The notes under the pieces: generated by a model
The model's input: the letters and a program-made list of their open reading frames with translations, nothing else
What the model was told of the DNA's origin: nothing
Databases searched by the model: none
In this document: positions 3,254 through 54,393 of the stretch, in pieces
How the letters are laid out: every line of letters begins with the position of its first letter
How positions within the stretch are numbered: position 1 is the stretch's first letter
Program-made: the position numbers and the translations under genes
IMG/VR virus record: IMGVR_UViG_3300036770_008729
Location: 62,001 to 126,000 of that record
Reading direction: 5' to 3' (one strand)
Length of the DNA stretch: 64,000 nucleotides

Positions 3254-3700
3254 TTAGAACTCATCATCATCTATTATAGTTGGATCATATGGATGAAAAT
3301 CTCTTCTTTTCTTATAGTTAATTGTAGGTTTTTTCTCAATAAAATCTTCTATTTTATCATACAACCTTAAACACTCATCATCTATATCTTTTAATTGTAA
3401 TTCTTTACCATTGTAACTGATAGTTCTGTTGTTATCATCAAGTGTAACATTTCCATCCATTAGATATATGATGTAAACACCGGGTTCGATTTCTACTACA
3501 CCTTTTACAACTTTTATACCATCTTGAAGGCGAGCGGATTGAATAGAGTGATTGTCAATCATTCTGTGAATTTTTTCTAATGTATCTCTGTCCTCTTTTT
3601 TATCGATGTTCAAAACTCTACGAGTTCCTCTTACAAGTCTTTGCATTAAAGGTTCCTTTTTAGGCTCTTCAAATTCTTCGAATAATTTTATATACTTCAT
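3254..3700 (-). CDS. hypothetical protein with CTS-like N-terminus
   Basis: Starts MKYIKLFEEFE; AATATATA 4 nt upstream. Confidence 0.75.
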   Translation of the reverse strand: MKYIKLFEEFEEPKKEPLMQRLVRGTRRVLNIDKKEDRDTLEKIHRMIDNHSIQSARLQDGIKVVKGVVEIEPGVYIIYLMDGNVTLDDNNRTISYNGKELQLKDIDDECLRLYDKIEDFIEKKPTINYKKRRDFHPYDPTIIDDDEF

Positions 3701-17088: not shown

Positions 17089-17511
17089 TTAAGCATTAAA
17101 ACCTGGTGGATCTATAAACAATTCTAAATTGGTGATATACCAATACTCTTCAAAGTCTTTTAATCTCTGTATATCAACTTTAAATCTATTCAATGATTCT
17201 AGAGATGTTCCCCAATAACCATAGGCATTTCCTTTACTACCATGTTTTTCTATAACATCTATCATTCTTAGAATAGTAGGTTTAACTTCAATCCAATAAG
17301 TAGATTTAGGGAAAATAAATTTGAATGTGTAAATTGCAATTCCATAGAATCTATCACACTCACACTTTACCTCACCTCCAGAAATAGGTTCATCTGTAAG
17401 TTCTCTACATATATCAACTAAATCTGAAAAAAGATTATCATTTAAATCTAAAAGATCTGGTCTAGTCAAAGTTAAAGATTCAAACTGATTATAACTTTTT
17501 ATTCTTTTCAT
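17089..17511 (-). CDS. CTS-like protein, apparent paralog of the 43714-47428 family
   Basis: MKRIKSYNQFES; LVDICRELTDE helix; AATATATA 5 nt upstream. Confidence 0.75.
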   Translation of the reverse strand: MKRIKSYNQFESLTLTRPDLLDLNDNLFSDLVDICRELTDEPISGGEVKCECDRFYGIAIYTFKFIFPKSTYWIEVKPTILRMIDVIEKHGSKGNAYGYWGTSLESLNRFKVDIQRLKDFEEYWYITNLELFIDPPGFNA

Positions 17512-28422: not shown

Positions 28423-28439
28423 AAAATAGACCCAATTTT

Positions 28440-29702: not shown

Positions 29703-29703
29703 A

Positions 29704-39328: not shown

Positions 39329-40870
39329 TTAAATAATCCTTAAGTATCTCGGAGTTTTGAACTTATCGGTTTCGATTGATAGAGCGTATCTCATTATTTT
39401 TGTAATCAAAGAATTAGATTCTTTGTGACTTACATTATGTAGTTGTAATATAGCAAGAATAATTTGCATAGACTGAATTCTTGATATAAGTCTATTTTCA
39501 CTTTTTGAAATATCAGTTCCTCTTTTTATAGGCTCAACTATTACTAATTGTCCACCTATCGAATCTCTATATTTTTTACACTGTGTAATAAGTTCCATAG
39601 TATAACTTTTTAACTGGTCAATGCTAAGTTGTTTTAATTCATTATATGATTGAAGATTTTGAATTTTATAACCAGAGCTAATTTTCTGATCAATGAATCT
39701 TTTAATTGCATTAAAAGAGATTTTACCATGTCTTGATGTTGAACCTTCTACTTCACCGTCTACATTGACATTATTTCCTGTATTAGAAGAATCAAAATTA
39801 ATTTTTCTATCTTTTATATCCACATCTTTGTTATTTCTATGTTTCCAAATAGAAGTTGTAGATATTTTCGAACCAATACCTTTTAGGTCAGATCCAACAT
39901 GAAATGATTTAATGAAGAAATCTGGTGGATTTTTATCAACCATTGAATTGGTTAATACTCCAAAACGTGATCCAATTTTTTTAAGAGATACTCCGATTAA
40001 TAATTTTTCATCAAATAAACTATTCATTTCGTCTTTTAACTTATGGATGTCTGTACACTCATCAATTCGATTATTTACTTGTTCTACATTATTTCTTGAT
40101 ACTAAATACATATCCGCTGGACAAAACTTAGATATGTTTATATCAGACCAACCACCATCTTTTGCAAATTTTTTATATTTCTTTTCTATATGAACATAAG
40201 GGGAACTATTTCCTACAAATGAGGCGTGATAAATCTCATATAAGTCATTAGTATTAACATATTCTTCTTTCCAGATTCTATTTGGAATCTTACAAAAAGT
40301 ATTAACCCAATCTTCATCCTGTAAAAAGTCATCTAGTAATTGTTCATTTACTTCAACTTTTTCTGGTGTGAAAACCAACTTTTGCATTTGAATATACTTA
40401 TAGAAGAATTCCCTCATATTTCTTGAAGTCAATAATTTATCAGGTAATGCTTGTTTTATACCAAAAAATAAACACTGAACTGATTCAAAGTTTCTAACCA
40501 TTACACCAGCACCCGATGATCCAAACTCTTTAGTCTTTTTGAATTGATTGATTTTGAACTCTTTACCATCTTTACTCATGAACACAGGAATATATCTACT
40601 ACCTGGTTTGAAATAAGACTTAGCCTTATCTATATCGTATTCATCATCTGTAGTAATTTTATCAATAGCAATCTCTGGTTCAACCCATTGTGAGTCGGAC
40701 TTCATTTTATCAACCTTAATTTTCTGATTGCTAGTTGTGGTAAGTTCTTCTTTGTTTTTAATTTTGGTTATAAGAACATCTCCTCTTTTTTGACCATTTA
40801 TCAATTTACCAAGTTCTGTTAAATCAAGTTCTGTTTCTTCTAGGAATTTTTTGAATCTCAACAATTTCAT
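39329..40870 (-). CDS. 513 aa protein with CTS-like N-terminus and PD-(D/E)XK-like nuclease motif
   Basis: MKLLRFKKFLEE; CPADMYLV...LIGVSLKK; AATATATA 5 nt upstream. Confidence 0.6.
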   Translation of the reverse strand: MKLLRFKKFLEETELDLTELGKLINGQKRGDVLITKIKNKEELTTTSNQKIKVDKMKSDSQWVEPEIAIDKITTDDEYDIDKAKSYFKPGSRYIPVFMSKDGKEFKINQFKKTKEFGSSGAGVMVRNFESVQCLFFGIKQALPDKLLTSRNMREFFYKYIQMQKLVFTPEKVEVNEQLLDDFLQDEDWVNTFCKIPNRIWKEEYVNTNDLYEIYHASFVGNSSPYVHIEKKYKKFAKDGGWSDINISKFCPADMYLVSRNNVEQVNNRIDECTDIHKLKDEMNSLFDEKLLIGVSLKKIGSRFGVLTNSMVDKNPPDFFIKSFHVGSDLKGIGSKISTTSIWKHRNNKDVDIKDRKINFDSSNTGNNVNVDGEVEGSTSRHGKISFNAIKRFIDQKISSGYKIQNLQSYNELKQLSIDQLKSYTMELITQCKKYRDSIGGQLVIVEPIKRGTDISKSENRLISRIQSMQIILAILQLHNVSHKESNSLITKIMRYALSIETDKFKTPRYLRII

Positions 40871-41763: not shown

Positions 41764-43611
41764 CTACTTTAACAACTCAGTCTTTCTTAAATCAGAGTTT
41801 TTACCAAACCAAACATCTAAACTTACATTTGATACATCATCTTTAGTTATAGATGTCATTCTTGGATTATTAATAATGTCTTGATACTCATCATCCACTA
41901 AAGCTGCTAAACCTTTTTTATACTTAATATCAAATTGTTTTAAGTCGTTTTTTTCAACAAACTGATTATATTCTGATTGTGTATAGAAAATAAGTTTCTT
42001 TTTACCTTTTTGTTTTGGTATAGCAACCACAATAGGTGTTTCTACTTTGTAAATCATTTTTCTATCAAACATTTCTGGCCAATACTTATAGAAAAAGTTA
42101 ATAAGAAGACCTGCTATCGAATTACCATCAACATCAGCATCTACATAAAATAGAACTCTACCATATCTTAAATCCCTTAAGTCAACCGTTTGTCCTAATT
42201 TAAGACCAATTGCAGCCATCAAATTAACCACTTCCTCATTTTGAACCAGCTTCTGATTAGTCATTTCTGATACATTAACAAACTTACCTTTAAGTGCAAA
42301 GGCACCCATAGTTTCTGGAGTTCTATACTTTCTAAATGCGGAAATAGCAGAATCACCCTCAAATAAACCAATAGAACATTTCCAGCGGTCTTTACCTTTG
42401 GCATCAATCAGTTTCTCAACTTTGATTTTACTTAATTTCTTATTAAGGTCTCTTTGTAGTTTAGATTCTTCTGCATTTTTCTTTTGTTGAATCCAATCTA
42501 AAATAGAATTAACGATTTCTGATTTAATAATTTGTGCAACAAATTTAGATGTTACCTCAAAAGTAGAACCAAAATCTTTTACTTCTGTAATCAACTTCTC
42601 TTTAGTTTGTGATGAGAATGATGGATTTATTATAGTAGAGTTTAAGAAAAGAAACATATGATTTTTTAGTTCAGATGGTTTAACATCTACTTTGTGTTTC
42701 TTTAGGAAAAACTCTTTTAACTGACTAATAATTTGATTCATTATGTAATCCACGTGGGTTCCACCATCATAAGTTTCAGTAGAGTTAGCAAAACTTACTT
42801 GTTGAAATCCAGATTCTGATAAGGCAACACCGATAGACCAGGTCTTATCTTTTTTAACATCATAGAAAAACTCTTCGTGATAAAGTTTGATATAGTCCTC
42901 AAATGATTTTATATTTATGAACTTATCATTAAAATAAAATTTGATGTTGGGGTTACATCCTGCTAAGTCCCAAACTCGCTTTTCAATTACTTTAAAGTGA
43001 TCGTTATCAATCTTTTCAATTCCAAATTGAGTTAAGTCTGGTTTCCATTTTATTTCAGTAAAGTTTTTAGTACCAGGTTTTACTTTTGCTTTATCTCTGT
43101 CTCTCATATTATTATAGAATCTTTGAGAGAAGTGATTTTTACCATCACAGGTGGTTACAATAAATTCAGTTGAAAAGATGTTTGTCAATTTAGCACCCAG
43201 TCCATTTAGACCGGCTACTGTTCTTTCATCGGTGTCATCATAGTTGGATCCAGACATAAGGTTGCCAAAAATAACCTCAGGAACATATTGATTATGTTCT
43301 TTGTGTATTTGAACGATAATACCACCGTTATCTTTAACAGATAAAGTATTATTCTCTATATCAACGTGAACATCTATTCTATTTAAGCTTTTATTTCTTT
43401 GATGTTCATCAACTGCGTTTGTAATAACTTCATCAAAGATTTTGATGAATGAGGGGATGTAAGTTACGGACTTAAGTTCCATTTTACTTTCATCGTTTAT
43501 TAAGTATTTTTGAGAAGTGTTGGGTTTATTAGAGCCTACATAAGTTCCAGGTCTAAGAAGAACGTGACTAATTTGGTCTAATACTTTATATTTATCTTCA
43601 ATTTTTTTCAT
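41764..43611 (-). CDS. type II DNA topoisomerase ATPase/TOPRIM subunit (T4 gp39+gp60-like)
   Basis: HVLLRPGTYVGS, FDEVITNAVD, GLNGLGAK, LFEGDSA, DADVDG, YKKGL. Confidence 0.95.
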   Translation of the reverse strand: MKKIEDKYKVLDQISHVLLRPGTYVGSNKPNTSQKYLINDESKMELKSVTYIPSFIKIFDEVITNAVDEHQRNKSLNRIDVHVDIENNTLSVKDNGGIIVQIHKEHNQYVPEVIFGNLMSGSNYDDTDERTVAGLNGLGAKLTNIFSTEFIVTTCDGKNHFSQRFYNNMRDRDKAKVKPGTKNFTEIKWKPDLTQFGIEKIDNDHFKVIEKRVWDLAGCNPNIKFYFNDKFINIKSFEDYIKLYHEEFFYDVKKDKTWSIGVALSESGFQQVSFANSTETYDGGTHVDYIMNQIISQLKEFFLKKHKVDVKPSELKNHMFLFLNSTIINPSFSSQTKEKLITEVKDFGSTFEVTSKFVAQIIKSEIVNSILDWIQQKKNAEESKLQRDLNKKLSKIKVEKLIDAKGKDRWKCSIGLFEGDSAISAFRKYRTPETMGAFALKGKFVNVSEMTNQKLVQNEEVVNLMAAIGLKLGQTVDLRDLRYGRVLFYVDADVDGNSIAGLLINFFYKYWPEMFDRKMIYKVETPIVVAIPKQKGKKKLIFYTQSEYNQFVEKNDLKQFDIKYKKGLAALVDDEYQDIINNPRMTSITKDDVSNVSLDVWFGKNSDLRKTELLK

Positions 43612-43701
43612 TATTTGATTACCAAGATTTTTTGAGTAAGCTAAGTATATATATGTTTTTTTTTATTTTGTTTTTAGCTTTGTTTTTTAGGTGGTCAATT
43701 T

Positions 43702-43709
43702 AATATATA
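43702..43709 (+). promoter_or_regulatory. AATATATA motif 4 nt before ATG 43714
   Basis: Heads the CTS-like gene cluster. Confidence 0.5.
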
Positions 43710-43713
43710 GTAA

Positions 43714-44640
43714 ATGAAGTATTTAAAAACTTTTGAAGAAATTTATTATGATTCTAGAAAACCGGTTGATGGTTATATTGACGCTAATGATTTAGTTGGT
43801 CAAAGATTGTGGTTTCATACTAATAGAACACACCGAAACAATGGTTGGAATGGTATGATTGGTATTTATGATACTACAAGAAGTGGTAGAAAAATAGGAT
43901 TAGCGGGTAAATATACAAATGAAGTTAGATTAACTTCTCCAATTTTCTTTCAGACATCAGAGGCAGGTGCTGAAAATATAAAATCTAAAGGTGATAGAAC
44001 TTTAATTGCTGGGGTTTCTGGTGTGGTGATTCCGACTGATAGTAATACTTCTGGAATGCAAAAAATCACTTACAATCCTTTTGATGTCGGGTATTTTCAT
44101 TTACTAGATGATAGTGGTAAAAAGGAAATAGTTTCTGCTGATGAAGTTTATTTTGTGGCTTCCGAAGATGGAAAATGGGAAATATGGGCAATGAATCCAA
44201 AGTTTAAATTATTAAAAGAGAATAGACACTACCGTGGAGAACATCCTAAATCAATGCCAGATGAAGATAAAGATTATATCAATGATATTTTACTTGAACT
44301 TCAGTTATTGGATATGAGATATGAAATTGTAGAGTGTTGGTATCACAAAGACGAATCTGACCAAACGGTTGGTAATATACATAAACATAGTCGTCCTGAA
44401 GAACTGATAAAGTCATATAGGTCGATTAAAGTAAGTTTATATGATAAGGAAAGGAGATTTTTTAGAATAGATGATATAGACTCCGTTTTAACAAGTCTTA
44501 AGGTATGGTCATCGGGTAAATATGAAATTGATTTATCTTGGCCAAACGAAATGATTTATTTACCAATGGAAGATTTTATAGATGAGTTTGGTGGTGAAGA
44601 ATTATATACAATAGACATTTACATTTACAAAAGAAATTAG
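43714..44640 (+). CDS. two-domain CTS-like protein
   Basis: MKYLKTFEE; N-domain with HTNRTH...EAG...ITYNPF; C-domain YINDILLEL like neighbours. Confidence 0.8.
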   Translation: MKYLKTFEEIYYDSRKPVDGYIDANDLVGQRLWFHTNRTHRNNGWNGMIGIYDTTRSGRKIGLAGKYTNEVRLTSPIFFQTSEAGAENIKSKGDRTLIAGVSGVVIPTDSNTSGMQKITYNPFDVGYFHLLDDSGKKEIVSADEVYFVASEDGKWEIWAMNPKFKLLKENRHYRGEHPKSMPDEDKDYINDILLELQLLDMRYEIVECWYHKDESDQTVGNIHKHSRPEELIKSYRSIKVSLYDKERRFFRIDDIDSVLTSLKVWSSGKYEIDLSWPNEMIYLPMEDFIDEFGGEELYTIDIYIYKRN

Positions 44641-44643
44641 GAG

Positions 44644-45186
44644 ATGAAATACTTAAAGAAATATAAATTATTTGAATCCACTCCTGATGAAGAATGGAGT
44701 ACAGTAGAAGAAAGAGAAAATACTATTAGACATATATCACTTGAATTTGAAGACGTTGGACTTATATGTAGTATTTCTAAAGTCAGAAAAGATGTTGAAT
44801 TAGAACCAGACCGTTATAATGGTAAAACAAAAACTGATCTCTTTTTAGAAGTTTATTTGTCAAGAAATTGGTATTCACCAAATAGAGAAATACCTGGTGT
44901 AGTAAATCCTGAAGGTGGTTACCCTGGTAATCTTATTTTCTGGTATGAAATCAAAAATATAATCATTAGAATTGCTAAATGGTATTATGAAGTAGAGAGC
45001 ATTTATGATCCTATAAGTAAAGATGCTGTTTATAGAGATGAAAAGGAGAAATCACCTTTGAGATTCTTTGGTAGTGGAATAGAGATGTTGATTGGTTGTA
45101 GTAAAGAAGAGGATTTTGAGAAATTAGGTGATTTTATTTCATTTACTAATTTTAGAATAATGATTAAAATATCTGAACAAGTATAA
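44644..45186 (+). CDS. CTS-like protein
   Basis: MKYLKKYKLFES; IRHISLEFED. Confidence 0.8.
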   Translation: MKYLKKYKLFESTPDEEWSTVEERENTIRHISLEFEDVGLICSISKVRKDVELEPDRYNGKTKTDLFLEVYLSRNWYSPNREIPGVVNPEGGYPGNLIFWYEIKNIIIRIAKWYYEVESIYDPISKDAVYRDEKEKSPLRFFGSGIEMLIGCSKEEDFEKLGDFISFTNFRIMIKISEQV

Positions 45187-45190
45187 AGTT

Positions 45191-45694
45191 ATGAAGTGGA
45201 TAAAATTATATGAAAATTTCGATGATAACATTTCTATTGAAAAAGATGTTGAAGATATATTCTGGGACTTAGAGGGATTTAAAGTTGAGATTTCATTCTG
45301 GGTAAATGGTGCTCGTGGTGGTTTTTTGGCAAGTGATGAGTCTGGATCGCAAAAATATGGACCAATTGCAGATAATGGTAAATTATACTTAAAAGTTGAG
45401 GTCAAAAAAATAGAACCACCTGGTAACTTCCTTACAAAAGATGGTTTTAATTGGATAGAAACTAAATCTTACTTTAATAGATTGAGAAGTTTTTTAAGCG
45501 AGTATAGTCCAGTTAAATATAAAATCAACACTATGGTATTTAGCCACGCACCTCGTTTTAGTATTGTTAGTAACGCTGAAATACACGATACTTATCAAAC
45601 ATCATTTGATTATGTTGATTCTAAATATATAGAAAAAGATTTTACAGATAGGAATACCTTAACATCGGTATATTATTTTTTTGAAAGATTATGA
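45191..45694 (+). CDS. CTS-like protein
   Basis: MKWIKLYENF; VEDIFWDLE. Confidence 0.8.
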   Translation: MKWIKLYENFDDNISIEKDVEDIFWDLEGFKVEISFWVNGARGGFLASDESGSQKYGPIADNGKLYLKVEVKKIEPPGNFLTKDGFNWIETKSYFNRLRSFLSEYSPVKYKINTMVFSHAPRFSIVSNAEIHDTYQTSFDYVDSKYIEKDFTDRNTLTSVYYFFERL

Positions 45695-46341
45695 AATACT
45701 TAAAATTATTTGAAGAAGCCACTAATGTTCCTGATTACTTTTTACCATTAGAAAGTATCAATCATTATTTAGATCCGAAATCTGGTGTGATTTATCCTAT
45801 ATTAAAATCTGGTGGATATGATGAAAGAAATGATTTTGATTTAGAAGCCTTTACTTCTGGTCCTGAAGAAGCTCAAATTCCTGGAGATGCTCCAACTGGA
45901 AATATTTCAGATGAAGATCAAATGATTATAGACCAGTATCGTCAGTCAACTGAAAAGTATTTCAAAGATAAAATTAATTGGAGTTTAATAGATTTAGCAA
46001 AAGAAAGGTCTTTAGAAATAATTGATAATGGAGGTAGGTTATTAATCTCTGTTTCTATTAAAGTTTCAAATACCTCATCATTTTTTATCTATTATGAGGA
46101 TATAACTCACACAAGACCTAAACAATTCTGGAATATGTATTTTGAAGATTCAATGTCTATATTGTCGAAATGTACAGGCGAATTAATTTATAATTTTTTA
46201 TTATCAACAAAGTTAAATCAAGCTAACCTCCCTTGGGGTGAGGATTATATATCTTATAAAACAGGTGATACAGAAACCAGTGAATTGGTCAGACTACTTC
46301 ATAAGTTATATCCTGAAGAGAATATAAAGGCGATGAATTAA
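45691..46341 (+). CDS. CTS-like protein
   Basis: MKYLKLFEE. Confidence 0.8.
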   Translation: MKYLKLFEEATNVPDYFLPLESINHYLDPKSGVIYPILKSGGYDERNDFDLEAFTSGPEEAQIPGDAPTGNISDEDQMIIDQYRQSTEKYFKDKINWSLIDLAKERSLEIIDNGGRLLISVSIKVSNTSSFFIYYEDITHTRPKQFWNMYFEDSMSILSKCTGELIYNFLLSTKLNQANLPWGEDYISYKTGDTETSELVRLLHKLYPEENIKAMN

Positions 46342-46343
46342 TA

Positions 46344-46793
46344 ATGAAACACCTAAAAAAATATAGATTATTTGAATCACAGAAGTATAATATGGGTGAT
46401 TTTATGGATATCATTTATGATTTGCGTCTTAGGTGTTATGACTTTAACGATGGTGGTTGCACTTGGAAAATTCTACCGGAAGAAGAAATACAAATCAACT
46501 TACTTAGACTTGCCTATAATAGAACTATTGAGTCTAAAGGCGTTGTATTTAAGTTATTAATTGATATACGAAATATAAAATCAGATGATGATCTTAATTC
46601 TCAATCTCTACCTAATTGGTTTATCAATAAATGTCTAGAAATAGAATCAATGATGAGAATGTATGGATTTAAAACTCTACCTTCTATCAAAAGACCAACT
46701 GACTGGGAACATTTTGACACAATTGACGAACTAAGTGAGGCAAGTGGTCTTTTTAGAGAAGTTCAACTTCTTTTCAGAAAAATTGGAGAGTAG
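46344..46793 (+). CDS. CTS-like protein
   Basis: MKHLKKYRLFES; FMDIIYDL. Confidence 0.8.
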   Translation: MKHLKKYRLFESQKYNMGDFMDIIYDLRLRCYDFNDGGCTWKILPEEEIQINLLRLAYNRTIESKGVVFKLLIDIRNIKSDDDLNSQSLPNWFINKCLEIESMMRMYGFKTLPSIKRPTDWEHFDTIDELSEASGLFREVQLLFRKIGE

Positions 46794-46866
46794 AAGATGG
46801 GGGAGTGGACATCTACTTTTATGATTGGCATTTCTCGCTAATGCTAGCCCCTAATTCCCAATCAAC
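46789..46866 (-). ncRNA. candidate small structured RNA
   Basis: GC-rich for this genome; stems GATTGG/CCAATC, GCATT/AATGC, AGTAG(AA)GATG/CATCTACT; minus-strand TATATTTG at 46878-46885. Confidence 0.35.
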
Positions 46867-46924
46867 CAATTTATTTCCAAATATAATAATTAAATTTATA
46901 TATAACTAAAATTAATTTCTTATT

Positions 46925-47005
46925 ATGTTCAGTTCGGGAAACATCTTCATTATGATTTTTGGCATTCTGTTAGCCTTAGGATTAATTTTTAATTTTAATA
47001 TATAA
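46925..47005 (+). CDS. putative 26 aa single-TM peptide
   Basis: MFSSGNIFIMIFGILLALGLIFNFNI; below track cutoff. Confidence 0.45.
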   Translation: MFSSGNIFIMIFGILLALGLIFNFNI

Positions 47006-47008
47006 GTT

Positions 47009-47428
47009 ATGAGATACTTAAAGTCATATAAAGTATTTGAGATAAGAGAAAGTCCTTATTTAGATGGATCGGATAGTCCTATGAAAGTTAAATATGGAAA
47101 AGAAGTTATTGATAAGTGTGATGAGGTGATTGAGTATATCAAACAGATTATGTTAAACTTAGAAGATTTGAAATTTTATTGTTATGTGAATTACACACCT
47201 TTAACAAAAGTTTATCAGGAAGTTGAGCCTATTTTATTTGTTGATATAAGTCAGAATCCAGAAATACCATTAGATGAAGAAGCAAAAACAGAACTTGAGT
47301 ATACAATAGAATCAATTAAAAAATATATTGATTCAAAACATTTTTTCCTAACTGATTATCGTTTTAATGATAGAGGTGTTGAAAAGTATTCAGCAAGATT
47401 CTATCCAAAACCTGAAAAGCAAAACTGA
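47009..47428 (+). CDS. CTS-like protein
   Basis: MRYLKSYKVFE; IKQIMLNLED; AATATATA 4 nt upstream. Confidence 0.8.
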   Translation: MRYLKSYKVFEIRESPYLDGSDSPMKVKYGKEVIDKCDEVIEYIKQIMLNLEDLKFYCYVNYTPLTKVYQEVEPILFVDISQNPEIPLDEEAKTELEYTIESIKKYIDSKHFFLTDYRFNDRGVEKYSARFYPKPEKQN

Positions 47429-47429
47429 T

Positions 47430-48077
47430 ATGAAATACATTAAAACACAAGAAGAATTCAATGAAGGGTTCAATCTTAAAAAAGCACTAATCGGTGGTGC
47501 AATAGGGGCATCTATTGGTTTTTCCGCTTTACATCTTTCAGAAATTGATGGTAAAGCAAAAAAAGAAGATACTGAAATAGTATCTGGTCAGAAATTCGAT
47601 CAATTTGATGTTTATGTTAATAGTGAAGAATTTGATCTCAATATATCCGAAGATGGTGTAATAACTTCAGAATGGACTGAAGAACATGGTTCTGGTAAAA
47701 ACAGAACTACACATACTTATAGAGGAGCTACCGTTCCAAAAGGCACAACCGATATATGGGTCGAATCAAAATTCGCTGAAATAAATGGCAATGTATTTGT
47801 TAGCACTAAGCCTTTACAAAATGGCAATCATATTAGATTATCCGATTTAGATATAGAAGAACAAACTGCCACCTATACAATCTATAGTGGTGGTATGTTT
47901 GGTGACTTAGATTATATCATAGTTGATAATGGACATGTTGATGGTGAGGAATTCACAATTGATGGTAAGATAGGTAATTGGAGTTGTGATAAATTAGGAA
48001 GTCATATTTATAGTTTCACCTTTAAAAACTTTGGTGGAGGATCTGGTGGTGGTGCTGGAAGTGGAGGAAAATTTTAA
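47430..48077 (+). CDS. CTS-like protein with GxxxG hydrophobic helix and Gly-rich C-terminus
   Basis: MKYIKTQEEFNEG-FNLKKALIGGAIGASIGFSAL; ends FGGGSGGGAGSGGKF; start reassigned to 47430. Confidence 0.75.
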   Translation: MKYIKTQEEFNEGFNLKKALIGGAIGASIGFSALHLSEIDGKAKKEDTEIVSGQKFDQFDVYVNSEEFDLNISEDGVITSEWTEEHGSGKNRTTHTYRGATVPKGTTDIWVESKFAEINGNVFVSTKPLQNGNHIRLSDLDIEEQTATYTIYSGGMFGDLDYIIVDNGHVDGEEFTIDGKIGNWSCDKLGSHIYSFTFKNFGGGSGGGAGSGGKF

Positions 48078-48174: not shown

Positions 48175-49113
48175 ATGAAAATACTTTATGGAGTTCAACT
48201 CACAGGCAATGGGCATATCAGAAGGTCCTTACACCTTATAGAAAATCTAAGAGCAAAAGGATACAATGTAGATATACTTACATCCGGTGCTGGTAGTAAT
48301 TTAACAATTGAAGCAAAATGGAAATTTACAGGCCTCACTTTACAATACAATAACGGAAGTATTGATTGGATTAAAACTATACTCAAAGCAAAACCAATAC
48401 GACTTATAAAGGAAATTAAAAGTAAATTAGAACACTACGATTTAGTTATCTCTGATTTTGAACCAGTTTCTGCCTATTGGGCAAAATTAAATGGAGTTAA
48501 ATCTATATCAATATGTAATCAAAACTCTATAACCTTAACCGGAAATAACTTTGGAATATCTAAATGGTTTATTAAATGGTTTGCTAAATGTGATCATCTA
48601 ATTGGTTATGATTATCTACAAACTGAAAACATCTTTCAACCAATTTGTAACATATCACTCTTTGGTAGAAAAGAGAGTAAGAACATCTTAGTATACCTAC
48701 CTTATTTGAATAATAAAAAGATAGTAGATGTATTACAAAAAGTAGATTTAGATTGTATTATCTACACAAATCAAAAAGTAGATTCTTCTGGTAAAATACA
48801 AGTAAAAAAATGTAGTGAAGATTTCACAAAAGATCTATTGAGTTGTGTTAGCATTATTACTCATTCTGGATTTTCAACCACTTCAGAAGCCTTAATTTTA
48901 GGAAAAAAGATTTGGACTATACCAGTAAAAGGTCAATTAGAACAGGAACTTAATTGTAAGAAATTAAAATCCATGGGTGTTTATACAGAAGGTGAATTCA
49001 GATTATCAAACTTAAAGATATGGATTAATCAATGGAAATCAATTGAGTATAAATGGAAAGATCCTACTGATAGAGTTGTAAAAAAGATTATTGAAATATA
49101 TGAAAAAGATTAA
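48175..49113 (+). CDS. GT-B glycosyltransferase (MJ1255/VC2487-like)
   Basis: ILYGVQLTGNGHIRR, VISDFEP, HSGFSTTSEAL, PVKGQLEQELN. Confidence 0.85.
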   Translation: MKILYGVQLTGNGHIRRSLHLIENLRAKGYNVDILTSGAGSNLTIEAKWKFTGLTLQYNNGSIDWIKTILKAKPIRLIKEIKSKLEHYDLVISDFEPVSAYWAKLNGVKSISICNQNSITLTGNNFGISKWFIKWFAKCDHLIGYDYLQTENIFQPICNISLFGRKESKNILVYLPYLNNKKIVDVLQKVDLDCIIYTNQKVDSSGKIQVKKCSEDFTKDLLSCVSIITHSGFSTTSEALILGKKIWTIPVKGQLEQELNCKKLKSMGVYTEGEFRLSNLKIWINQWKSIEYKWKDPTDRVVKKIIEIYEKD

Positions 49114-49831
49114 AACACTTTTTATATCAGATGTTCATCTTGGAACTTCTAAGTCAAGAGCTGACTTACTTTTAGAAGTATTTAAGGAATGGGAATATGA
49201 AAACTTAGTTATTATTGGTGATTTTATAGACTTGACCGCACTTAAGAAGAAGTTTTTTTGGAAAGAAGACCATTCAACCGTAATACAAAAAGTTTTAAGG
49301 ATGTCGAGAAAAGATATTAAGGTAATTTACATTTTGGGAAATCACGACCACTATCTTAGAGGTCTGATTAAAGAACAAAACCTAAATATAGGTGATATAT
49401 TACTTTGTGATGAATACTATTATACAACTATAAAAGGTGAAAAAATTTATATTTGTCATGGTGACCAGTTTGATGGATTTATTAGAATGCATCCGTTTTT
49501 ATATGTTTTAGGAGATTGGGCTTATGAGTTATCATTTAAGATTAATAAGTGGTATAATAAGATTAGATTTATGTTTGGATTGGAGTATTGGTCGCTTTCT
49601 GCTTTCTTAAAGATGAAGGTAAAAAATGCAGTATCGTTTATTAATGATTTTAAGATACTTTCCATTAAGAAGTTAGAAGAGGTAAAGTGTGATTCTATAA
49701 TGATAGGTCATATTCATACACCCGCTATTGAAAGAGGAGAAAAGTCCTACTATAACACAGGGGATTTTTGCGAAAGTTGTTCGTATTTAGTTGAAACATT
49801 GGATGGTGAAATCCAGTTGAACTTTTGCTAA
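49100..49831 (+). CDS. calcineurin-like metallophosphoesterase (UDP-2,3-diacylglucosamine diphosphatase-like)
   Basis: ISDVHLG, GDFID, GNHD, HGDQFD, GHIH, NTGD. Confidence 0.88.
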   Translation: MKKIKTLFISDVHLGTSKSRADLLLEVFKEWEYENLVIIGDFIDLTALKKKFFWKEDHSTVIQKVLRMSRKDIKVIYILGNHDHYLRGLIKEQNLNIGDILLCDEYYYTTIKGEKIYICHGDQFDGFIRMHPFLYVLGDWAYELSFKINKWYNKIRFMFGLEYWSLSAFLKMKVKNAVSFINDFKILSIKKLEEVKCDSIMIGHIHTPAIERGEKSYYNTGDFCESCSYLVETLDGEIQLNFC

Positions 49832-49932
49832 TAAATTAGAACTTGAACAAAAACCATCAATACATCAAATTAACTCATCACAAAAATAATATTTATATTT
49901 TTAATACAACATATTATTCTTATATTTGTATT

Positions 49933-50209
49933 ATGGAAATATGTATGAAGAAAACTAAAGAAGAAATAGAGCATATATAAGTTTCAACTTGAAAATATAA
50001 TTGAAGCGTTAAGAATCACTTCTAACATACAAAATTGTAGTAAATTAGAAACATCACACGATAGACAAGTAAGGTCTGCTTTACAGTATGCTAAAAATGC
50101 TTTAAATGGAGATAAAGATATTGAAGTAAATTATATGACAGGAACAAACAAAAATAATATGGGAGGAGACGTAAGAACTTATGGTTTACCTTACTACATA
50201 AAGAAATAA
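49933..50209 (+). pseudogene. frameshifted small gene
   Basis: MEICMKKTKEEIEHI stops at 49978-49980; +1 frame continues YKFQLENIIEALRIT...YIKK; TATATTTG 4 nt upstream. Confidence 0.5.
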
Positions 50210-50227
50210 CAGATAAAGAGGATTAAT

Positions 50228-50389
50228 ATGAACCCACTCGACCTAATAGACGAACATCAAATCATAAGAGAAACAGTTGGATATGAGTTTCTAAAGGATG
50301 TTGAATTGGTAGACATTCCTGAAGTAATGAAGTTCTTAAAGATAGTTTACAATTATAAGAAACTAAAAACAATAGAAAGTAATGGATAG
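50228..50389 (+). CDS. 53 aa hypothetical protein
   Basis: MNPLDLIDEHQIIRETVGY...; stop overlaps next start. Confidence 0.5.
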   Translation: MNPLDLIDEHQIIRETVGYEFLKDVELVDIPEVMKFLKIVYNYKKLKTIESNG

Positions 50390-50576
50390 GCAAGAAGGAT
50401 ATTATTGGGTTAAATATAAAGGAAAATATAAAATAGCTAAATATTCTATTTTCAAATTATATGAAACTATTAAACCATTTTGGTTTATATGTTGTGACCC
50501 AACCTCGTATCAAGATTCAGATTTTGAACACATCAACGAAGTAAGAATTAAACAACCAGGCGAACTACCTGACTAG
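50382..50576 (+). CDS. small hypothetical protein
   Basis: RQEGYYWVKY motif. Confidence 0.6.
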   Translation: MDRQEGYYWVKYKGKYKIAKYSIFKLYETIKPFWFICCDPTSYQDSDFEHINEVRIKQPGELPD

Positions 50577-50620
50577 GCTTCCCAAACCCTTAAACGTATA
50601 TTTAATCAAATTAAAAAGAT

Positions 50621-50938
50621 ATGAGTAAAATAACACAACACAAATACAACGCTGATTTAGTTGTTCCAAGAGAAGAACCAAAAGCAAAATACACATTAAG
50701 AAGATTAAACGATGGTTTAACTAAAACAGGAAGCAGAATAAAATATATTGAATGGGATGAAAACACTAGCGAAGGTCAATCATCACATGACGACATAAAG
50801 GTGGGTCGATCCTTAATGTTAGAACCACGTATGCAATTCACTTGGCTAACAACTGCAATCACTGAAATAGTAGAGCAAAGAGAAGGATACATTAAGTTTC
50901 AAACAAAAAATTCAACTTATGTATTAACTGAATTGTAA
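50621..50938 (+). CDS. hypothetical protein
   Basis: 105 aa; TTAITEI...FQTKNSTY. Confidence 0.65.
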   Translation: MSKITQHKYNADLVVPREEPKAKYTLRRLNDGLTKTGSRIKYIEWDENTSEGQSSHDDIKVGRSLMLEPRMQFTWLTTAITEIVEQREGYIKFQTKNSTYVLTEL

Positions 50939-50947
50939 TTAAAAATT

Positions 50948-51166
50948 ATGGAAAAAAAATCAAAACATCCAGGAGACGTAGCAAAATGGATTGAAAAAGT
51001 AATCTATTCATGTACAAACGTAAGTCAATTACTAGTAGCAGAAAAACTAATTAGTAGATTTTTTATTTTACACGGATATTCTTCACCATATTCATTACAT
51101 TTAAAAATGGTTTCAGAAATGGCTTGGTGTAGATTATCAATACCGACTAAACAAGACAATGAGTAA
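50948..51166 (+). CDS. hypothetical protein
   Basis: 72 aa. Confidence 0.55.
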   Translation: MEKKSKHPGDVAKWIEKVIYSCTNVSQLLVAEKLISRFFILHGYSSPYSLHLKMVSEMAWCRLSIPTKQDNE

Positions 51167-51305
51167 AATTCCCATAAGCCTCATCCAATAGTTCTTGTTG
51201 TTCTTTGTTGTTCTTTGTTGTATTGTACAACATCGGTCATCATTAAATGAAAACAGTTGTACTTTTGCTAATATATAAACAAAATTTAAATATATTAATA
51301 TACCT

Positions 51306-52655
51306 ATGACTATGATGACTGAAAAATCTATTTCTGAGTTTCTCAGTAATGAATATAAGGATTTCGCCATGTATGTGGTCGAAGGACGTGCAATACCATC
51401 AAGTATTGACGGGTTCAAACCCACACAAAGAAAAATTATTCATGTTGCCAATCAAATCTGGAAAACCGGAAATGAAAAAACACTTAAAGTGTTTCAATTA
51501 AGTGGTAAGGTCGCCTCTGATTGTTTCTACCATCACGGCGATATGTCCTTATCAAATGCCATAATAAATATGGCTCAAAAGTTTAAGAACAACGCTCCCC
51601 TTTTAGAAGAAGAAGGTCAGTTTGGTTCTCTTAGGTCTCCACAACCTGGAGCTCCTCGTTATATCGGAACCAAACTAAATGATAACTTCCGTCTAATATA
51701 CAAAGACTTTGAGCTACTTCAATATAAAGAAGAAGAAGGAGAACAAATTGAACCTAAATATTTCTTACCTATTGTTCCTACCGTTTTATTAAACGGATCA
51801 TCTGGAATTGCAGTTGGATTTGCCTCAAACATCTTAAATAGAGATATAAAAAGTATTATTGATGCTTCTGTTAGAGTTCTTATGGGTAAAGAGCCAGGTG
51901 AAGTAAAACCACATTTAAATGGATTTTTAGGTGAGTTTATACAAGATACAGAAAATAATAAAAGATGGATTATTAGAGGTAAGTGTGAAAGAGTTAATAC
52001 TTCTACCGTGAGAATAACTGAACTTCCACCATCAACAACTTATGAAAAGTATGAAGAGGTTTTGGATAAATTGGTGGATGATAAAGTAATTGTTTCTTAT
52101 GATGATAACTGTAAGGATAATATAGATTATACAATCAAATTCACAAGAGTAGATTTAGAAAAGTTCGATGATGAGAAGTTGTTAAGAGTATTGAAGTTAG
52201 AGGAATCATCAACTGAGATTTACTCAACACTGGATGAGTTTGGTAAATTAAAAATATTTGATAATACAACAGACATTATTAAATACTTTGTTAATTTCAG
52301 ATTAACTTATTATCATAAGAGAAAGTCATTCTTATTAGAAAGAATGAATAAAGAATTAAAACTTCTTTCCAATCGAGGTAGATTTATTAAAGCGATTTTA
52401 GATGAGAAGCTAAAAGTTAATAATGTTGTAAAGTCAGAAATCGTAGCACAGATTGAATCTTTGAGTTTAGATAAGATAGATGATTCTTATGATTACTTAT
52501 TGAAAATGCCTATTTACTCTTTAACAAAAGAAGTATTTGAGAAGTTAAAAGAAGATTTCAAATTGAAAAAGGAAGAGATTACAAAGCTGGAAGCAACTGA
52601 TCCTAAGGATATGTATTTAGGAGATTTGGCGGAATTGAAAAAGAAGTATAAATAG
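51306..52655 (+). CDS. type II DNA topoisomerase breakage-reunion subunit (T4 gp52-like)
   Basis: RAIPSSIDGFKPTQRK, YHHGD, APRY (catalytic Tyr), LLNGSSGIAVGF, ITELP. Confidence 0.95.
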   Translation: MTMMTEKSISEFLSNEYKDFAMYVVEGRAIPSSIDGFKPTQRKIIHVANQIWKTGNEKTLKVFQLSGKVASDCFYHHGDMSLSNAIINMAQKFKNNAPLLEEEGQFGSLRSPQPGAPRYIGTKLNDNFRLIYKDFELLQYKEEEGEQIEPKYFLPIVPTVLLNGSSGIAVGFASNILNRDIKSIIDASVRVLMGKEPGEVKPHLNGFLGEFIQDTENNKRWIIRGKCERVNTSTVRITELPPSTTYEKYEEVLDKLVDDKVIVSYDDNCKDNIDYTIKFTRVDLEKFDDEKLLRVLKLEESSTEIYSTLDEFGKLKIFDNTTDIIKYFVNFRLTYYHKRKSFLLERMNKELKLLSNRGRFIKAILDEKLKVNNVVKSEIVAQIESLSLDKIDDSYDYLLKMPIYSLTKEVFEKLKEDFKLKKEEITKLEATDPKDMYLGDLAELKKKYK

Positions 52656-53796: not shown

Positions 53797-53826
53797 TTTC
53801 ATCTTGTGAATTTTAATATATAACTT

Positions 53827-54393
53827 ATGAAACATCTAAAAAACTATAAGTTATTTGAAAATTTAAATACACCTATCAGTATAGAACAATTCTTATCTGA
53901 AATCAATTTCCCTCAAGAATTAAGAACACAAGTAATAAACTGGTGGAATTTAAACAGAGGTGAATTTATAATTCATTGTTTTAATTTCTCATCACCTCAA
54001 CCAATAGCTGGTGTTTTTCTTGGTGTAGATGAAATTGCTATCAATAAAAGATTACCAATGCCACCTCATATTAAATTATTTTTAGCTCTTCATGAATCTG
54101 GACATTGTAATCAACACAGAGAAGGAAGATTTATGACTGGTTATTATGACACCGTAATTGCTGGTAACAAACCAGCCTTTTTACAAGCCTATATGGATCT
54201 TGAAAAAGAAGCTAATGACTATGCTTTTAATTCATTAAGAGAGATGGGATTAGAAAGATTGTATCAATTTGAGGAATCTAGATTAAGAGGAAATCAAAGA
54301 GCAGGTGAAATGGTTTGGTCAATGATGACTGCTGATATAGCGAGATTCAATCCTAATGATTTTATTGACCTTTTGAAAAAACAAATACTTTAA
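53827..54393 (+). CDS. HExxH zinc metallopeptidase-like protein with CTS-like N-terminus
   Basis: MKHLKNYKLFEN; ALHESGHCNQH; EKEANDYA; AATATATA (53815-53822) 4 nt upstream. Confidence 0.75.
   Translation: MKHLKNYKLFENLNTPISIEQFLSEINFPQELRTQVINWWNLNRGEFIIHCFNFSSPQPIAGVFLGVDEIAINKRLPMPPHIKLFLALHESGHCNQHREGRFMTGYYDTVIAGNKPAFLQAYMDLEKEANDYAFNSLREMGLERLYQFEESRLRGNQRAGEMVWSMMTADIARFNPNDFIDLLKKQIL

What the first reader, a model, noticed from the sequence alone, without database searches (positions are those of the whole stretch)
43714..48077. Tandem array of seven CTS-like genes, several diverged paralogs: a candidate internal-protein / anti-defence locus
Seen: seven ORFs in tandem, each beginning with the tag. 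Five share a helix I/V-x-D-I-x-x-(E/D)-L-x-D (YINDILLEL, IRHISLEFED, VEDIFWDLE, FMDIIYDL, IKQIMLNLED), also seen at 17089-17511, and a later amphipathic helix (IKNIIIRI, TKSYFNRL, IDSVLTSL). Established: T4's ip locus is hypervariable, and IPI* inhibits the GmrSD restriction enzyme. Inference: a diversifying family of injected inhibitors or decoys against host defences.
Basis: partly seen in the sequence, partly recalled or inferred. Interest (0 to 1): 0.75.

Follow-up and report, generated by a model that had tools for sequence, protein, structure and literature searches.

The report
Tagged gene array in huge phage
Seven neighbouring genes of a huge Bacteroidota phage all start with the same 10-12-residue peptide, but so do about 15% of the genes in this phage and its relatives, so it looks like a proteome-wide address label, most likely one that loads proteins into the phage head as in phage T4.

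Summary
The seven tandem + strand ORFs (43714-48077) are real, and each begins with MK[YHW][LI]Kx[FY]... The tag is not special to this array. About 50-60 of roughly 388 ORFs in the 281-kb record carry it, and related huge phages (LR756502, LR745206, LR756504 and others) carry 13-57 copies each. It is selected as a peptide, it is unstructured in AlphaFold models, and it sits on unrelated folds.

A2 and A3 are true remote paralogues (hhalign E 5e-6 without the tag). A1-C and A6 share only a short helix motif, at the level of the control proteins. A4, A5 and A7 are unrelated.

The array lies between the two topoisomerase II subunit genes. Its cassette content differs among three phages whose flanking genes are 92-97% identical. 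dN/dS is 0.19-0.25 for A1, A2, A3 and A6 (0.08 for A7), against 0.03-0.05 for the core genes.

Relatives have a T4-type head module: gp23-like capsid protein, gp20-like portal, and a gp21-like protease fused to a scaffold full of [IL]AE[NS] repeats. A TAATATATA box precedes those head genes and is enriched before tagged genes.

A T4-like capsid-targeting propeptide is therefore the best reading (about 0.4), but it is unproven. Nothing here supports or tests an anti-defence role. The own record lacks head genes.

The parts
41764..43611 (-). DNA topoisomerase II large subunit (T4 gp39-like). Conserved left anchor of the variable locus.
   Evidence: tblastn finds annotated topoisomerase II large subunits in about 2250 phage records. 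It is 96-97% identical in L075 and L114.
43701..43709 (+). TAATATATA promoter-like box, 4 nt before the A1 ATG. Presumed start of transcription unit A1-A5.
   Evidence: The same box precedes portal, protease-scaffold and other head-module genes in relatives. It is enriched before tagged genes.
43714..44640 (+). A1, 308 aa, pI 5.3. Tag MKYLKTFEE, then a Phage_L5_gp82-like domain (residues 56-149), then a C-terminal part with the helix motif YINDILLEL.
   Evidence: Pfam PF25735 E 7e-8 and phrog_586. Orthologues at 77% in L075 and 85% in L114. dN/dS 0.22.
44644..45186 (+). A2, 180 aa, pI 5.0. Tag MKYLKKYKLFES, a variable linker, then an alpha/beta domain. Member of a family of at least 59 proteins.
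   Evidence: M1, E11 and S12 are invariant, and L4, K5, Y7, K8 and F10 are at least 90% conserved. AF2 model has pLDDT 84.8 overall, with residues 1-14 below 50. No known fold match.
45191..45694 (+). A3, 167 aa, pI 5.1. Tag MKWIKLYENF. Remote paralogue of A2.
   Evidence: 21 homologues. The tag switches between the MKWIKLYEDF and MKHLKTYKIFES forms within this one family. AF2 model has pLDDT 72.9 overall, with residues 1-12 below 50. hhalign against the A2 family gives E 1e-13, or 5e-6 without the tag.
45691..46341 (+). A4, 216 aa, pI 4.6. Tag MKYLKLFEE. No detectable relative in the related loci that were fetched.
   Evidence: Absent from the syntenic loci L075 and L114.
46344..46793 (+). 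A5, 149 aa, pI 5.8. Tag MKHLKKYRLFES.
   Evidence: 10 homologues. Present in L114 at 77%, absent in L075. No profile match to the A2 or A3 family.
46925..47005 (+). Relic 26-codon ORF (MFSSGNIFIMIFGILLALGLIFNFNI). It is the N-terminus of a 104-aa membrane protein that is intact in L075 and L114.
   Evidence: Sequence read. Intact genes at L075:11040-11354 and L114:9785-10099.
46996..47004 (+). Second TAATATATA box, 4 nt before the A6 ATG. Presumed start of transcription unit A6-A7.
47009..47428 (+). A6, 139 aa, pI 5.1. Tag MRYLKSYKVFE. It has positional homologues next to the topoisomerase gene in more distant relatives.
   Evidence: L002, L029, L057. 78% in L075, 75% in L114. dN/dS 0.25.
47430..48077 (+). 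A7, 215 aa, pI 4.8. Tag MKYIKTQEEF, followed directly by a hydrophobic, membrane-span-like segment (ALIGGAIGASIGFSAL), and a Gly/Ser-rich C-terminus.
   Evidence: 95% identical in L075 and L114; dN/dS 0.08. In L075 it is fused in frame to A6; the window differs there by a single base, apparently one extra A in the run near 47420.
48175..49113 (+). Glycosyltransferase-like gene (Glyco_trans_1_3 in the syntenic loci). Untagged, and part of the right anchor.
   Evidence: Pfam label on the L075 and L114 orthologues. 76-92% identity.
49091..49831 (+). Metallophosphoesterase. Conserved right anchor.
   Evidence: 74-78% identical in five distant loci and 92-96% in L075 and L114. Pfam Metallophos label on the orthologues.
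51306..52655 (+). DNA topoisomerase II medium subunit (T4 gp52-like). In most relatives it lies next to the large subunit, with only tagged ORFs between them.
   Evidence: phrog_551 E 8e-151. Synteny.
17089..17511 (-).
53827..54393 (+). Another tagged ORF (MKHLKNYKLFEN) behind a TAATATATA box.
3254..3700 (-). Another tagged ORF (MKYIKLFEEFEE) behind a TAATATATA box.

Best explanation
The region is one of many tandem arrays of small, acidic, fast-evolving accessory genes in a huge Bacteroidota phage (Mahaphage-like group).

Shown:
- Each gene begins with a clade-wide N-terminal tag of 10-12 residues: M-K-[YHW]-[LI]-K-x-[FY]-x-x-F, with a Glu at position 8, 9 or 11.
- The tag is an unstructured extension in the two models made (A2, A3).
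- It is selected at the amino-acid level.
- It sits on unrelated protein bodies.
- About 15% of the ORFs carry it.

Inferred: the tag works like the capsid-targeting sequence of the T4 internal proteins. It docks the protein on the scaffold core of the assembling prohead and is then cut off after the Glu by the gp21-type prohead protease. The mature acidic protein stays in the head and enters the host with the DNA.

The array sits in a recombination-prone slot between the two topoisomerase II subunit genes and gains and loses cassettes quickly. What the delivered proteins do in the host (host takeover or counter-defence) is a guess.
For: Tag statistics:
- About 50-57 of 388 ORFs carry the tag.
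- The strict DNA pattern occurs 31 times in the own record and 13-57 times in six related huge-phage records, against 0-1 for the reversed control.
- Synonymous codon use inside the tag equals genome-wide use, so selection acts on the peptide.

Tag as a separate module:
- AF2 gives pLDDT below 50 and coil for residues 1-12 and 1-14, while the bodies fold well.
- In the A2 family, members only 38% identical overall keep M1, E11 and S12 invariant, followed by an indel-rich linker.
- One orthologous family switches between the two tag forms in the same register.
- The tag is found on an AAA_33 kinase-like protein whose untagged paralogue starts directly at the P-loop, and on SET-domain, T4-lysozyme-like, Rnl1, GNAT and membrane proteins.

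T4-type head machinery in the clade:
- PF07068 capsid protein, E 1e-28.
- Portal matching gp20, E 1e-26.
- A roughly 700-aa ORF with a gp21-like N-terminal domain (PF03420, E 1e-5) fused to 11-12 tandem 13-residue repeats, each carrying [IL]AE[NSH].
- The capsid protein keeps an INE|NAY motif near the site where T4 gp23 is cut.

Match to a cleavage motif:
- 47% of tags have [LIV]xE in residues 4-13, against 13% of untagged N-termini.
- The residue after FE is mostly S, N or D, the same preference seen after the scaffold [IL]AE.

Other parallels:
- T4 CTSs read from NC_000866 (MKTFKEF..., MKTYQEFIAE) share M1, K2, K/Q5 and F7 with the tag.
- T4 CTSs are 10-20-residue propeptides removed by gp21 after Glu, and giant-phage ejection proteins can carry a membrane segment after the propeptide (PMC5694885). 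A7 has the same layout.
- TAATATATA precedes portal, protease-scaffold and other head genes in relatives. It precedes 47% of tagged genes against 14% of untagged genes (p 4e-7), and 14 of 18 against 39 of 177 operon-first genes.
- A head-module gene in four relatives encodes an Asp/Glu-rich protein with a tag-like start.
- Tagged proteins are acidic: median pI 5.3 against 6.3, p 4e-5.
- Cassette turnover and elevated dN/dS.
Against: - There are no proteomic data or any other direct evidence of packaging or cleavage.
- The own record has no capsid protein, protease, terminase or gp55-like gene. The head machinery is inferred from relatives whose topoisomerase is 66-73% identical.
- Fifty or more cargo proteins per 281 kb (15% of ORFs) is roughly ten times the T4 number.
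- About half the tags lack [LIV]xE.
- LR756501 has the same repeat scaffold but only a degenerate tag. Cultured phages with related capsid proteins (PTm1, pT24, MA9V-1, MaF61, PAU) show no match to the tag pattern, so tag and head type do not co-vary simply.
- The TAATATATA box also precedes a topoisomerase gene, so it is not proven to be late-specific.
- Tag identity to the T4 CTS is only 2-4 of 10 residues.
- The mature parts resemble no T4 internal protein.
Confidence: 0.4

Rival explanations
1. The tag is only the conserved first element of one very large, rapidly diversifying protein superfamily (tag, linker, acidic helix 'DIxxxLxDxG', strand). It serves that family's own function, such as oligomerisation or binding a common partner, and nothing is sorted or cleaved.
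For: A profile of the A2 family finds 214 cluster representatives at E<=1e-3. Most match only profile positions 1-40 at their own N-terminus, and at least 121 of the 148 listed hits whose sequences were read begin with the tag. Arrays in relatives are full of tag+helix proteins. A2 and A3 are homologous beyond the tag.
Against: The tag also heads proteins with unrelated bodies that lack the helix module: AAA_33, SET, lysozyme, L5-gp82-like, Rnl1 and membrane proteins. AF2 does not pack the tag against the domain. The linker between tag and helix varies by 0-10 residues within one family.
Confidence: 0.2
2. The tag is an address for some other phage-built destination or machine, not the prohead. 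Examples are a replication or assembly compartment, the membrane, or a secretion route.
For: The tag is modular, peptide-level, N-terminal and carried by a large number of proteins. Its hydrophobic positions 3/4, 7 and 10 would lie on one face if it formed a helix.
Against: No candidate compartment or translocon gene was looked for or found. The tag is acidic on its C-terminal side, which suits membrane binding poorly. The promoter class shared with head genes and the conserved Glu fit the prohead reading better.
Confidence: 0.15
3. The tag is a recognition signal (degron or client tag) for the phage's own ClpC/ClpB-type AAA+ unfoldase. That would give timed removal or remodelling of a large set of accessory proteins.
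For: The record encodes a 722-aa double-AAA+ protein of the Clp/Hsp100 type at genome 27826-29994. From general knowledge, some ClpX substrates carry N-terminal Met-basic-hydrophobic motifs; this was not tested here.
Against: There is no ClpP and no adaptor gene among the ORFs scanned (neither was searched for specifically), and no co-variation was tested. It is unclear why 15% of phage genes, many driven by a head-gene-type promoter, would be marked for unfolding. This reading does not explain the invariant Glu-Ser.
Confidence: 0.08
4. The conservation is at the nucleic-acid level: a translation-initiation enhancer for leaderless or near-leaderless mRNAs, or a recombination cassette that spreads with the promoter.
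For: Many tagged genes have the TAATATATA box only 4-7 nt before the ATG, so transcripts may be leaderless. The first codons are AT-rich.
Against: Synonymous codons in the tag vary exactly as in the rest of the genome. Operon-internal tagged genes have no box. Tag residues stay conserved across families at 38% identity while codons differ.
Confidence: 0.03

Closest known systems
T4 capsid-targeting sequence (CTS) and internal proteins IPI, IPII, IPIII and Alt, in their hyperplastic loci
   Same: Both are short N-terminal peptides shared by otherwise unrelated proteins, with pattern M-K-x-hydrophobic-K/Q-x-F and a Glu within about 8-19 residues. The clade has a T4-type portal, capsid protein and gp21-like protease. 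The genes sit in variable loci and evolve fast (PMC5694885).
   Different: Here 50 or more genes per 281 kb carry the tag, against about half a dozen in T4. The proteins are acidic and of unknown fold, with no similarity to IPI/II/III or Alt. Only about half the tags have (L/I/V)xE. Packaging and cleavage are not shown.
Propeptides of ejection and inner-body proteins of phiKZ-like giant phages (SPN3US, phiKZ, 201phi2-1)
   Same: Those heads contain about 50 different proteins. Many are ejected, and several are processed after Glu by a gp21-related protease. Paralogues there keep identical N-termini while the rest diverges, and one mature ejection protein starts with a membrane segment (PMC5694885).
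   Different: Those propeptides are mostly 80-130 residues long with an A/S/G-x-E motif, and no uniform 10-residue tag marks a tenth of the proteome. No homology to those proteins was found here.
N-terminal trafficking domains of polymorphic effectors (conserved N-terminus, variable C-terminus, tandem cassettes)
   Same: The architecture is the same: a constant N-terminal module, a variable body, tandem arrays and rapid cassette exchange.
   Different: This is an analogy only. It involves different machinery and no sequence relation, and it was not tested.
Pfam PF25735 Phage_L5_gp82 (A1 only)
   Same: A1 residues 56-149 match the family above its cut-off (32.8 bits against 27).
   Different: A1 adds the tag in front and a 160-residue C-terminal part. 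The family has no known function.

Membership tests
T4-type CTS-bearing internal head proteins | A short (10-20 aa) N-terminal peptide conserved among otherwise unrelated proteins of one phage | tested here: met
   The tag sits on about 50 ORFs with unrelated bodies. It is disordered in AF2 models.
T4-type CTS-bearing internal head proteins | The phage has a gp21-type prohead protease and a scaffold core | tested here: inconclusive
   Absent from the own 281-kb record. Present in relatives that carry the tag (W01, W02, G001, G002, LR756504, LR756500), but the PF03420 match is below the curated cut-off, at E 1e-5.
T4-type CTS-bearing internal head proteins | Protease cleavage motif (L/I)-x-E at the end of the tag | tested here: inconclusive
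   [LIV]xE is present in 47% of tags against 13% of controls. E11-S12 is invariant in the A2 family. The scaffold repeats carry [IL]AE[NSH]. Actual cleavage was not observed.
T4-type CTS-bearing internal head proteins | The protein is present in proheads or virions and is ejected with the DNA | not testable with these tools
   The phage is uncultured and no proteome is available.
T4-type CTS-bearing internal head proteins | Sequence homology of the tag or body to T4 IPs or Alt | tested here: not met
   The bodies give BLASTP E>0.4 against T4 ipI, ipII, ipIII, alt, gp67 and gp68. The tag shares only 2-4 of 10 residues with the ipI CTS.
IPI*-like inhibitors of GmrSD (anti-restriction) | IPI*-like sequence or fold, or any known anti-defence family | tested here: not met
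   Pfam and PHROG hits are limited to A1's L5-gp82-like domain, of unknown function. Foldseek of the A2 and A3 models against PDB, and of A2 against AFDB clusters and A3 against BFVD, gives E>=0.02 and TM<0.4. Only unnamed viral clusters share the fold. A1 and A4-A7 were not modelled.
One paralogous family comprising the seven array genes | Detectable homology of the bodies once the tag is removed | tested here: not met
   Tag-stripped BLAST and iterated HMM searches link none of them. hhalign links only A2 and A3 (E 5e-6). A1-C and A6 are at control level, and A4, A5 and A7 show nothing.
Hypervariable (hyperplastic) accessory locus | Conserved flanks with differing gene content among close relatives | tested here: met
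   In window, L075 and L114, topoL is 96-97% and MPE 92-96% identical. A3 is missing in L114, A4 is missing in both, and A5 is missing in L075. L075 has six extra tagged genes in this array (one of them shared with L114). There are relic ORFs of 26 and 44 codons. Distant relatives have 0.8-2.9 kb in this slot instead of 5.5 kb.

The most novel reading that the evidence does not exclude
Huge Bacteroidota phages use a proteome-wide sorting code. A 10-12-residue N-terminal tag on about 15% of their genes (50 to over 100 proteins per genome) directs a large, rapidly exchanging cargo of enzymes, membrane proteins and orphan acidic proteins into the prohead, or into another phage-built destination, and is removed by the T4-type prohead protease. 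The virion would then deliver a whole 'starter proteome' with the DNA.
Probability: 0.35. Interest if true: 0.85.

Novelty: new variant of a known kind. Interest (0 to 1): 0.68.

Why it matters
If the tag is a head-targeting propeptide, it would let the packaged and injected protein set of uncultured huge phages be read directly from sequence. That would show these phages carry an unusually large and fluid protein cargo. It would single out hundreds of orphan families as first-minute effectors to test against Bacteroidota defences. It would also offer a short tag for loading foreign proteins into such capsids, as the T4 CTS does.

Even if the function is different, one peptide heading 15% of a viral proteome is an unreported organising principle. 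Neither a full-text search for six variants of the tag sequence nor the paper that defined the clade mentions it.

Tried and rejected
- Megablast of the locus against GenBank phages found no match.
- tblastn with a 22-residue tag peptide found nothing at E<=10, because the query is too short.
- A full-text literature search for six variants of the tag string returned 0 papers.
- Pfam and PHROG scans of the seven proteins found only A1's L5-gp82-like domain.
- A sigma-70 promoter and terminator scan of the locus was at chance level.
- Foldseek searches of the A3 model (PDB, BFVD) and the A2 model (PDB, AFDB clusters, ESM Atlas) found no named fold.
- A weak hit to the C-terminal domain of Bacteroidota WD40 proteins (TM 0.46, E 0.05) was not pursued.
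- Searches of the own record for T4 gp21, gp23, terminase and gp55 were negative, so the record is probably a fragment despite CheckV's 94%.
- I tried to predict a complex of a tagged protein with the protease-scaffold of the same relative. 
- The nucleic-acid-level explanation was rejected on codon usage.
- 'All seven are paralogues' was rejected.
- A simple co-occurrence of the tag with the repeat scaffold was rejected, because LR756501 has the scaffold but only a degenerate tag.

Full report
**What is there.**

The window is bases 62001-126000 of a 281,114-bp virus record with 30% G+C. Between the topoisomerase II large-subunit gene (41764-43611, minus strand) and a glycosyltransferase / metallophosphoesterase / topoisomerase II medium-subunit block (48175-52655, plus strand) lie seven co-oriented ORFs, called A1-A7 here:

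| ORF | Coordinates | Length (aa) |
|---|---|---|
| A1 | 43714-44640 | 308 |
| A2 | 44644-45186 | 180 |
| A3 | 45191-45694 | 167 |
| A4 | 45691-46341 | 216 |
| A5 | 46344-46793 | 149 |
| A6 | 47009-47428 | 139 |
| A7 | 47430-48077 | 215 |

All seven start with M-[KR]-[YHW]-[LI]-K, followed by an aromatic residue at position 7 and/or 10 and an acidic residue. All are acidic, with pI 4.6-5.8. A TAATATATA box lies 4 nt before the ATG of A1 and of A6, which suggests two transcription units.

**The tag is genome-wide and clade-wide.**

- A crude gene call gives 388 ORFs. Of these, 50 start with the strict tag, 57 have it within the first 50 residues, and about a dozen more carry degenerate forms.
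- The DNA pattern for M-K-[YH]-[LIVFM]-K-x-[FY] occurs 31 times in this record, and 33, 23, 57, 53, 33 and 13 times in six related huge-phage records of 385-642 kb. The reversed control occurs 0-1 times.
- Relatives contain further tandem arrays, for example nine tagged genes in a row in LR756502.
- The 735-kb LR756501 keeps only the core K-x-F-[EN]-[EN]-[FY].
- Lak-A2 has no match to the strict pattern, and neither do the cultured jumbo phages with related capsid proteins (PTm1, pT24, MA9V-1, MaF61, PAU). PTm1's ORF starts were also inspected directly and show no such motif.
- By topoisomerase and capsid similarity the record belongs with the 'Mahaphage' group of huge Bacteroidetes phages (PMC7162821). 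That paper does not mention such a tag.

**What kind of signal it is.**

- Synonymous codon choice inside the tag (K, Y, F, E, I, N, H) equals genome-wide usage, so selection acts on the peptide and not on the RNA or DNA.
- Within one orthologous family (A3 and 19 homologues) the tag switches between MKWIKLYEDF and MKHLKTYKIFES in the same register. What is kept is M1, K2, an aromatic at 3, L/I at 4, K5, Y/F at 7, F at 10 and then Glu.
- In the A2 family (36 members, down to 38% identity), M1, E11 and S12 are invariant, and L4, K5, Y7, K8 and F10 are at least 90% conserved. An indel-rich linker follows.
- AlphaFold2 models of A3 (pLDDT 72.9) and A2 (pLDDT 84.8) leave residues 1-12 and 1-14 unstructured at pLDDT below 50.
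- The tag heads unrelated bodies:
  - an AAA_33 kinase-like protein whose untagged paralogue begins directly at the P-loop;
  - a SET-domain protein;
  - a T4-lysozyme-like protein with a hydrophobic, membrane-span-like segment;
  - an Rnl1 RNA ligase;
  - GNAT and hexapeptide transferases;
  - several proteins with a membrane segment right after the tag, including A7.
- Only about 12 of 106 tagged proteins have any Pfam domain.

**Are the seven genes paralogues?**

- With the tag removed, BLAST and iterated HMM searches connect none of them.
- Family profiles show that A2 and A3 are homologous over about 80-100 columns. E is 1e-13 with the tag and 5e-6 without it. Their models have the same order of secondary-structure elements.
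- A1's C-terminal part and A6 match only the first helix, at E 0.001-0.02, which the unrelated controls also reach. A4, A5 and A7 match nothing.
- A1 additionally contains a Phage_L5_gp82-like domain.
- A profile of the A2 family finds 214 cluster representatives among 1.84 billion proteins. Most share only the first 40 positions (tag, linker, helix, 'DxG' strand) and then differ.
- So there is a large superfamily defined by an N-terminal module, to which A2 and A3 belong (A6 and A1-C only doubtfully). The bare tag has a wider distribution than that superfamily.

**A hypervariable slot.**

Three phages with nearly identical flanks (topoL 96-97%, MPE 92-96%, topoM 95% where present) differ in cassette content:

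| Source | Gene order in the slot |
|---|---|
| Window | A1 A2 A3 A4 A5 [relic] A6 A7 |
| L075 | A1 x241 x298 A2 x114 x156 A3 x358 [400 aa, minus strand] TM104 x189 A6-A7 |
| L114 | A1 [44-aa relic of x241] A2 x114 A5 [402 aa, minus strand] TM104 A6 [52 aa, minus strand] A7 |

- The window keeps a 26-codon relic of TM104 at 46925-47005.
- A6 and A7 are fused in frame in L075; the window differs there by a single base, apparently one extra A near 47420.
- In more distant relatives the slot between the two topoisomerase subunits holds other tagged ORFs, or only 0.8-2.9 kb.
- Pairwise dN/dS against L075 is 0.19-0.25 for A1, A2, A3 and A6, and 0.08 for A7. It is 0.03-0.05 for the three core genes, at similar dS. 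The array genes are therefore real genes under purifying selection that is relaxed or partly diversifying.

**Why the T4 CTS reading is the best available.**

- The own record has no capsid, protease, terminase or gp55-like gene and is probably a fragment.
- Tag-bearing relatives have a T4-type head module:
  - a gp20-like portal (E 1e-26);
  - a gp23-family capsid protein (PF07068, E 1e-28);
  - a roughly 700-aa ORF whose first 170 residues resemble the gp21 protease (PF03420, E 1e-5; BLASTP E 0.004). The rest contains 11-12 tandem 13-residue repeats NI.YSEY[IL]AENLDK, each with an [IL]AE[NSH] motif. This is what a scaffold meant to be chopped after Glu would look like.
- The capsid protein keeps INE|NAY near the position where T4 gp23 is cut.
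- T4's own CTSs, read from NC_000866, are MKTFKEF... (ipI) and MKTYQEFIAE (ipII, ipIII). They share M1, K2, K/Q5 and F7 with the tag. That is only 2-4 of 10 residues.
- According to PMC5694885, T4 CTSs are 10-20-residue propeptides that tie internal proteins to the core and are removed by gp21 after Glu. Giant-phage heads hold about 50 different proteins. One ejection protein starts with a membrane segment after its propeptide.
- 47% of tags have [LIV]xE in residues 4-13, against 13% of other N-termini. The residue after FE is S, N or D, like the scaffold's P1'.
- TAATATATA (TATATATA before the capsid gene) precedes portal, protease-scaffold and neighbouring head genes in relatives. In the own record it precedes 47% of tagged against 14% of untagged genes (p 4e-7).
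- A gp55-like ORF lies in the relatives' head region (E 5e-4). By analogy with T4's late promoter TATAAATA (general knowledge), the box is probably a late promoter.

**Why it is not settled.**

- Nothing shows that any tagged protein is in a particle or is cleaved.
- Fifty or more cargo species is an order of magnitude above T4.
- Half the tags lack [LIV]xE.
- Tag and scaffold do not co-vary simply.
- The box also precedes a topoisomerase gene.
- Rival readings are listed with the report: an N-terminal module of one superfamily, another destination, a client tag for the phage's ClpC-like AAA+ protein, or an RNA-level signal. The last is all but excluded.
- No array protein resembles IPI* or any known anti-defence family. 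The anti-defence idea remains a guess.

**Verdict.**

The interesting object is the tag system, not this particular array. I rate it a new variant of a known kind (CTS-like), at moderate confidence (0.4), and of fairly high interest.

Noticed in passing
whole record; in the window e.g. 43701-43709, 46996-47004, 53814-53822, 51269-51277: TAATATATA occurs 87 times in the 281-kb record, nearly always intergenic and oriented toward a gene. Its distance to the ATG is bimodal (4-7 nt, or 17-28 nt). The short spacing suggests leaderless mRNAs. The same box precedes head genes in relatives, so it is probably this clade's counterpart of the T4 late promoter.
   Followed up: partly
window 26500-31197 (+): Three consecutive genes match PHROG families that look like the bacterial PrkA/YeaG - YeaH(DUF444) - SpoVR stress/sporulation trio (phrog_22605, phrog_19072 'sporulation protein', phrog_35217). 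This is an unusual cargo for a phage.
   Followed up: no
G000 27826-29994 (+) (locus L004:9826-11991), outside the window: A 722-aa ClpC/ClpB-type double AAA+ unfoldase (AAA, AAA_lid_9, UVR, AAA_2, ClpB_D2-small). No Clp_N domain was detected, and no ClpP was seen among the ORFs scanned (it was not searched for specifically).
   Followed up: partly
L071:11273-13372, L072:10547-12670, L073:10745-12883 (-), L074:9767-11908, L091, L092, L093: In relatives the gp21-like prohead protease is fused to a scaffold with 11-12 tandem 13-residue repeats NI.YSEY[IL]AENLDK. Each repeat carries an [IL]AE[NSH] motif that looks like a cleavage site. 'YSEYIAE' also recalls the T4 CTS 'YQEFIAE'.
   Followed up: partly
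window 47400-47445: In the window A6 and A7 are separate genes in different reading frames, with the A7 ATG directly after the A6 stop. In L075 they form one 357-aa ORF, and in L114 they are two genes with a small minus-strand ORF between them. This may be a homopolymer error, a real frameshift or a fusion. Several database proteins of about 290-308 aa are also two such modules in tandem.
   Followed up: partly
window 46925-47005 (+): A 26-codon relic of a 104-aa membrane protein gene that is intact in L075 and L114. L114 in turn holds a 44-codon relic of a 241-aa tagged gene of L075. Both are signs of ongoing cassette decay.
   Followed up: yes
G000 175895-176644, 200646-201296, 227xxx, 259xxx; and 125007-125576, 207164-209251, 232593-234206, 238923-239558, 275551-277489: Two other gene sets with uniform N-termini lie behind the same TAATATATA box: MIRST.G(I/V).. 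(4 genes) and M(P/A)KR(I/L)(F/L/V)L.. (5-6 genes; BLAST groups six into one family). Their function is unknown.
   Followed up: no
window 22430-23671 (-), 39329-40870 (-), 33934-35094 (-), 25568-26182 (-): Larger ORFs with degenerate tag-like starts: MIKRYQEYITE (close to the T4 CTS pattern), MKLLRFKKFLEE, MKLKKYEQFLES and MKIIKFTEFINE. Three of them (not 33934-35094) lie behind a TAATATATA box, and the two scanned against Pfam have no domain.
   Followed up: no
whole record: The record has no capsid, prohead protease, terminase or gp55-like gene, although relatives have them. IMG/VR calls it a provirus and CheckV rates it 94% complete. It is more likely a fragment of a much larger (400-640 kb) phage genome.
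   Followed up: partly
G000 216107-217576 (-): A 489-aa ORF with a tyrosinase central domain (PF00264, E 3e-26).
   Followed up: no
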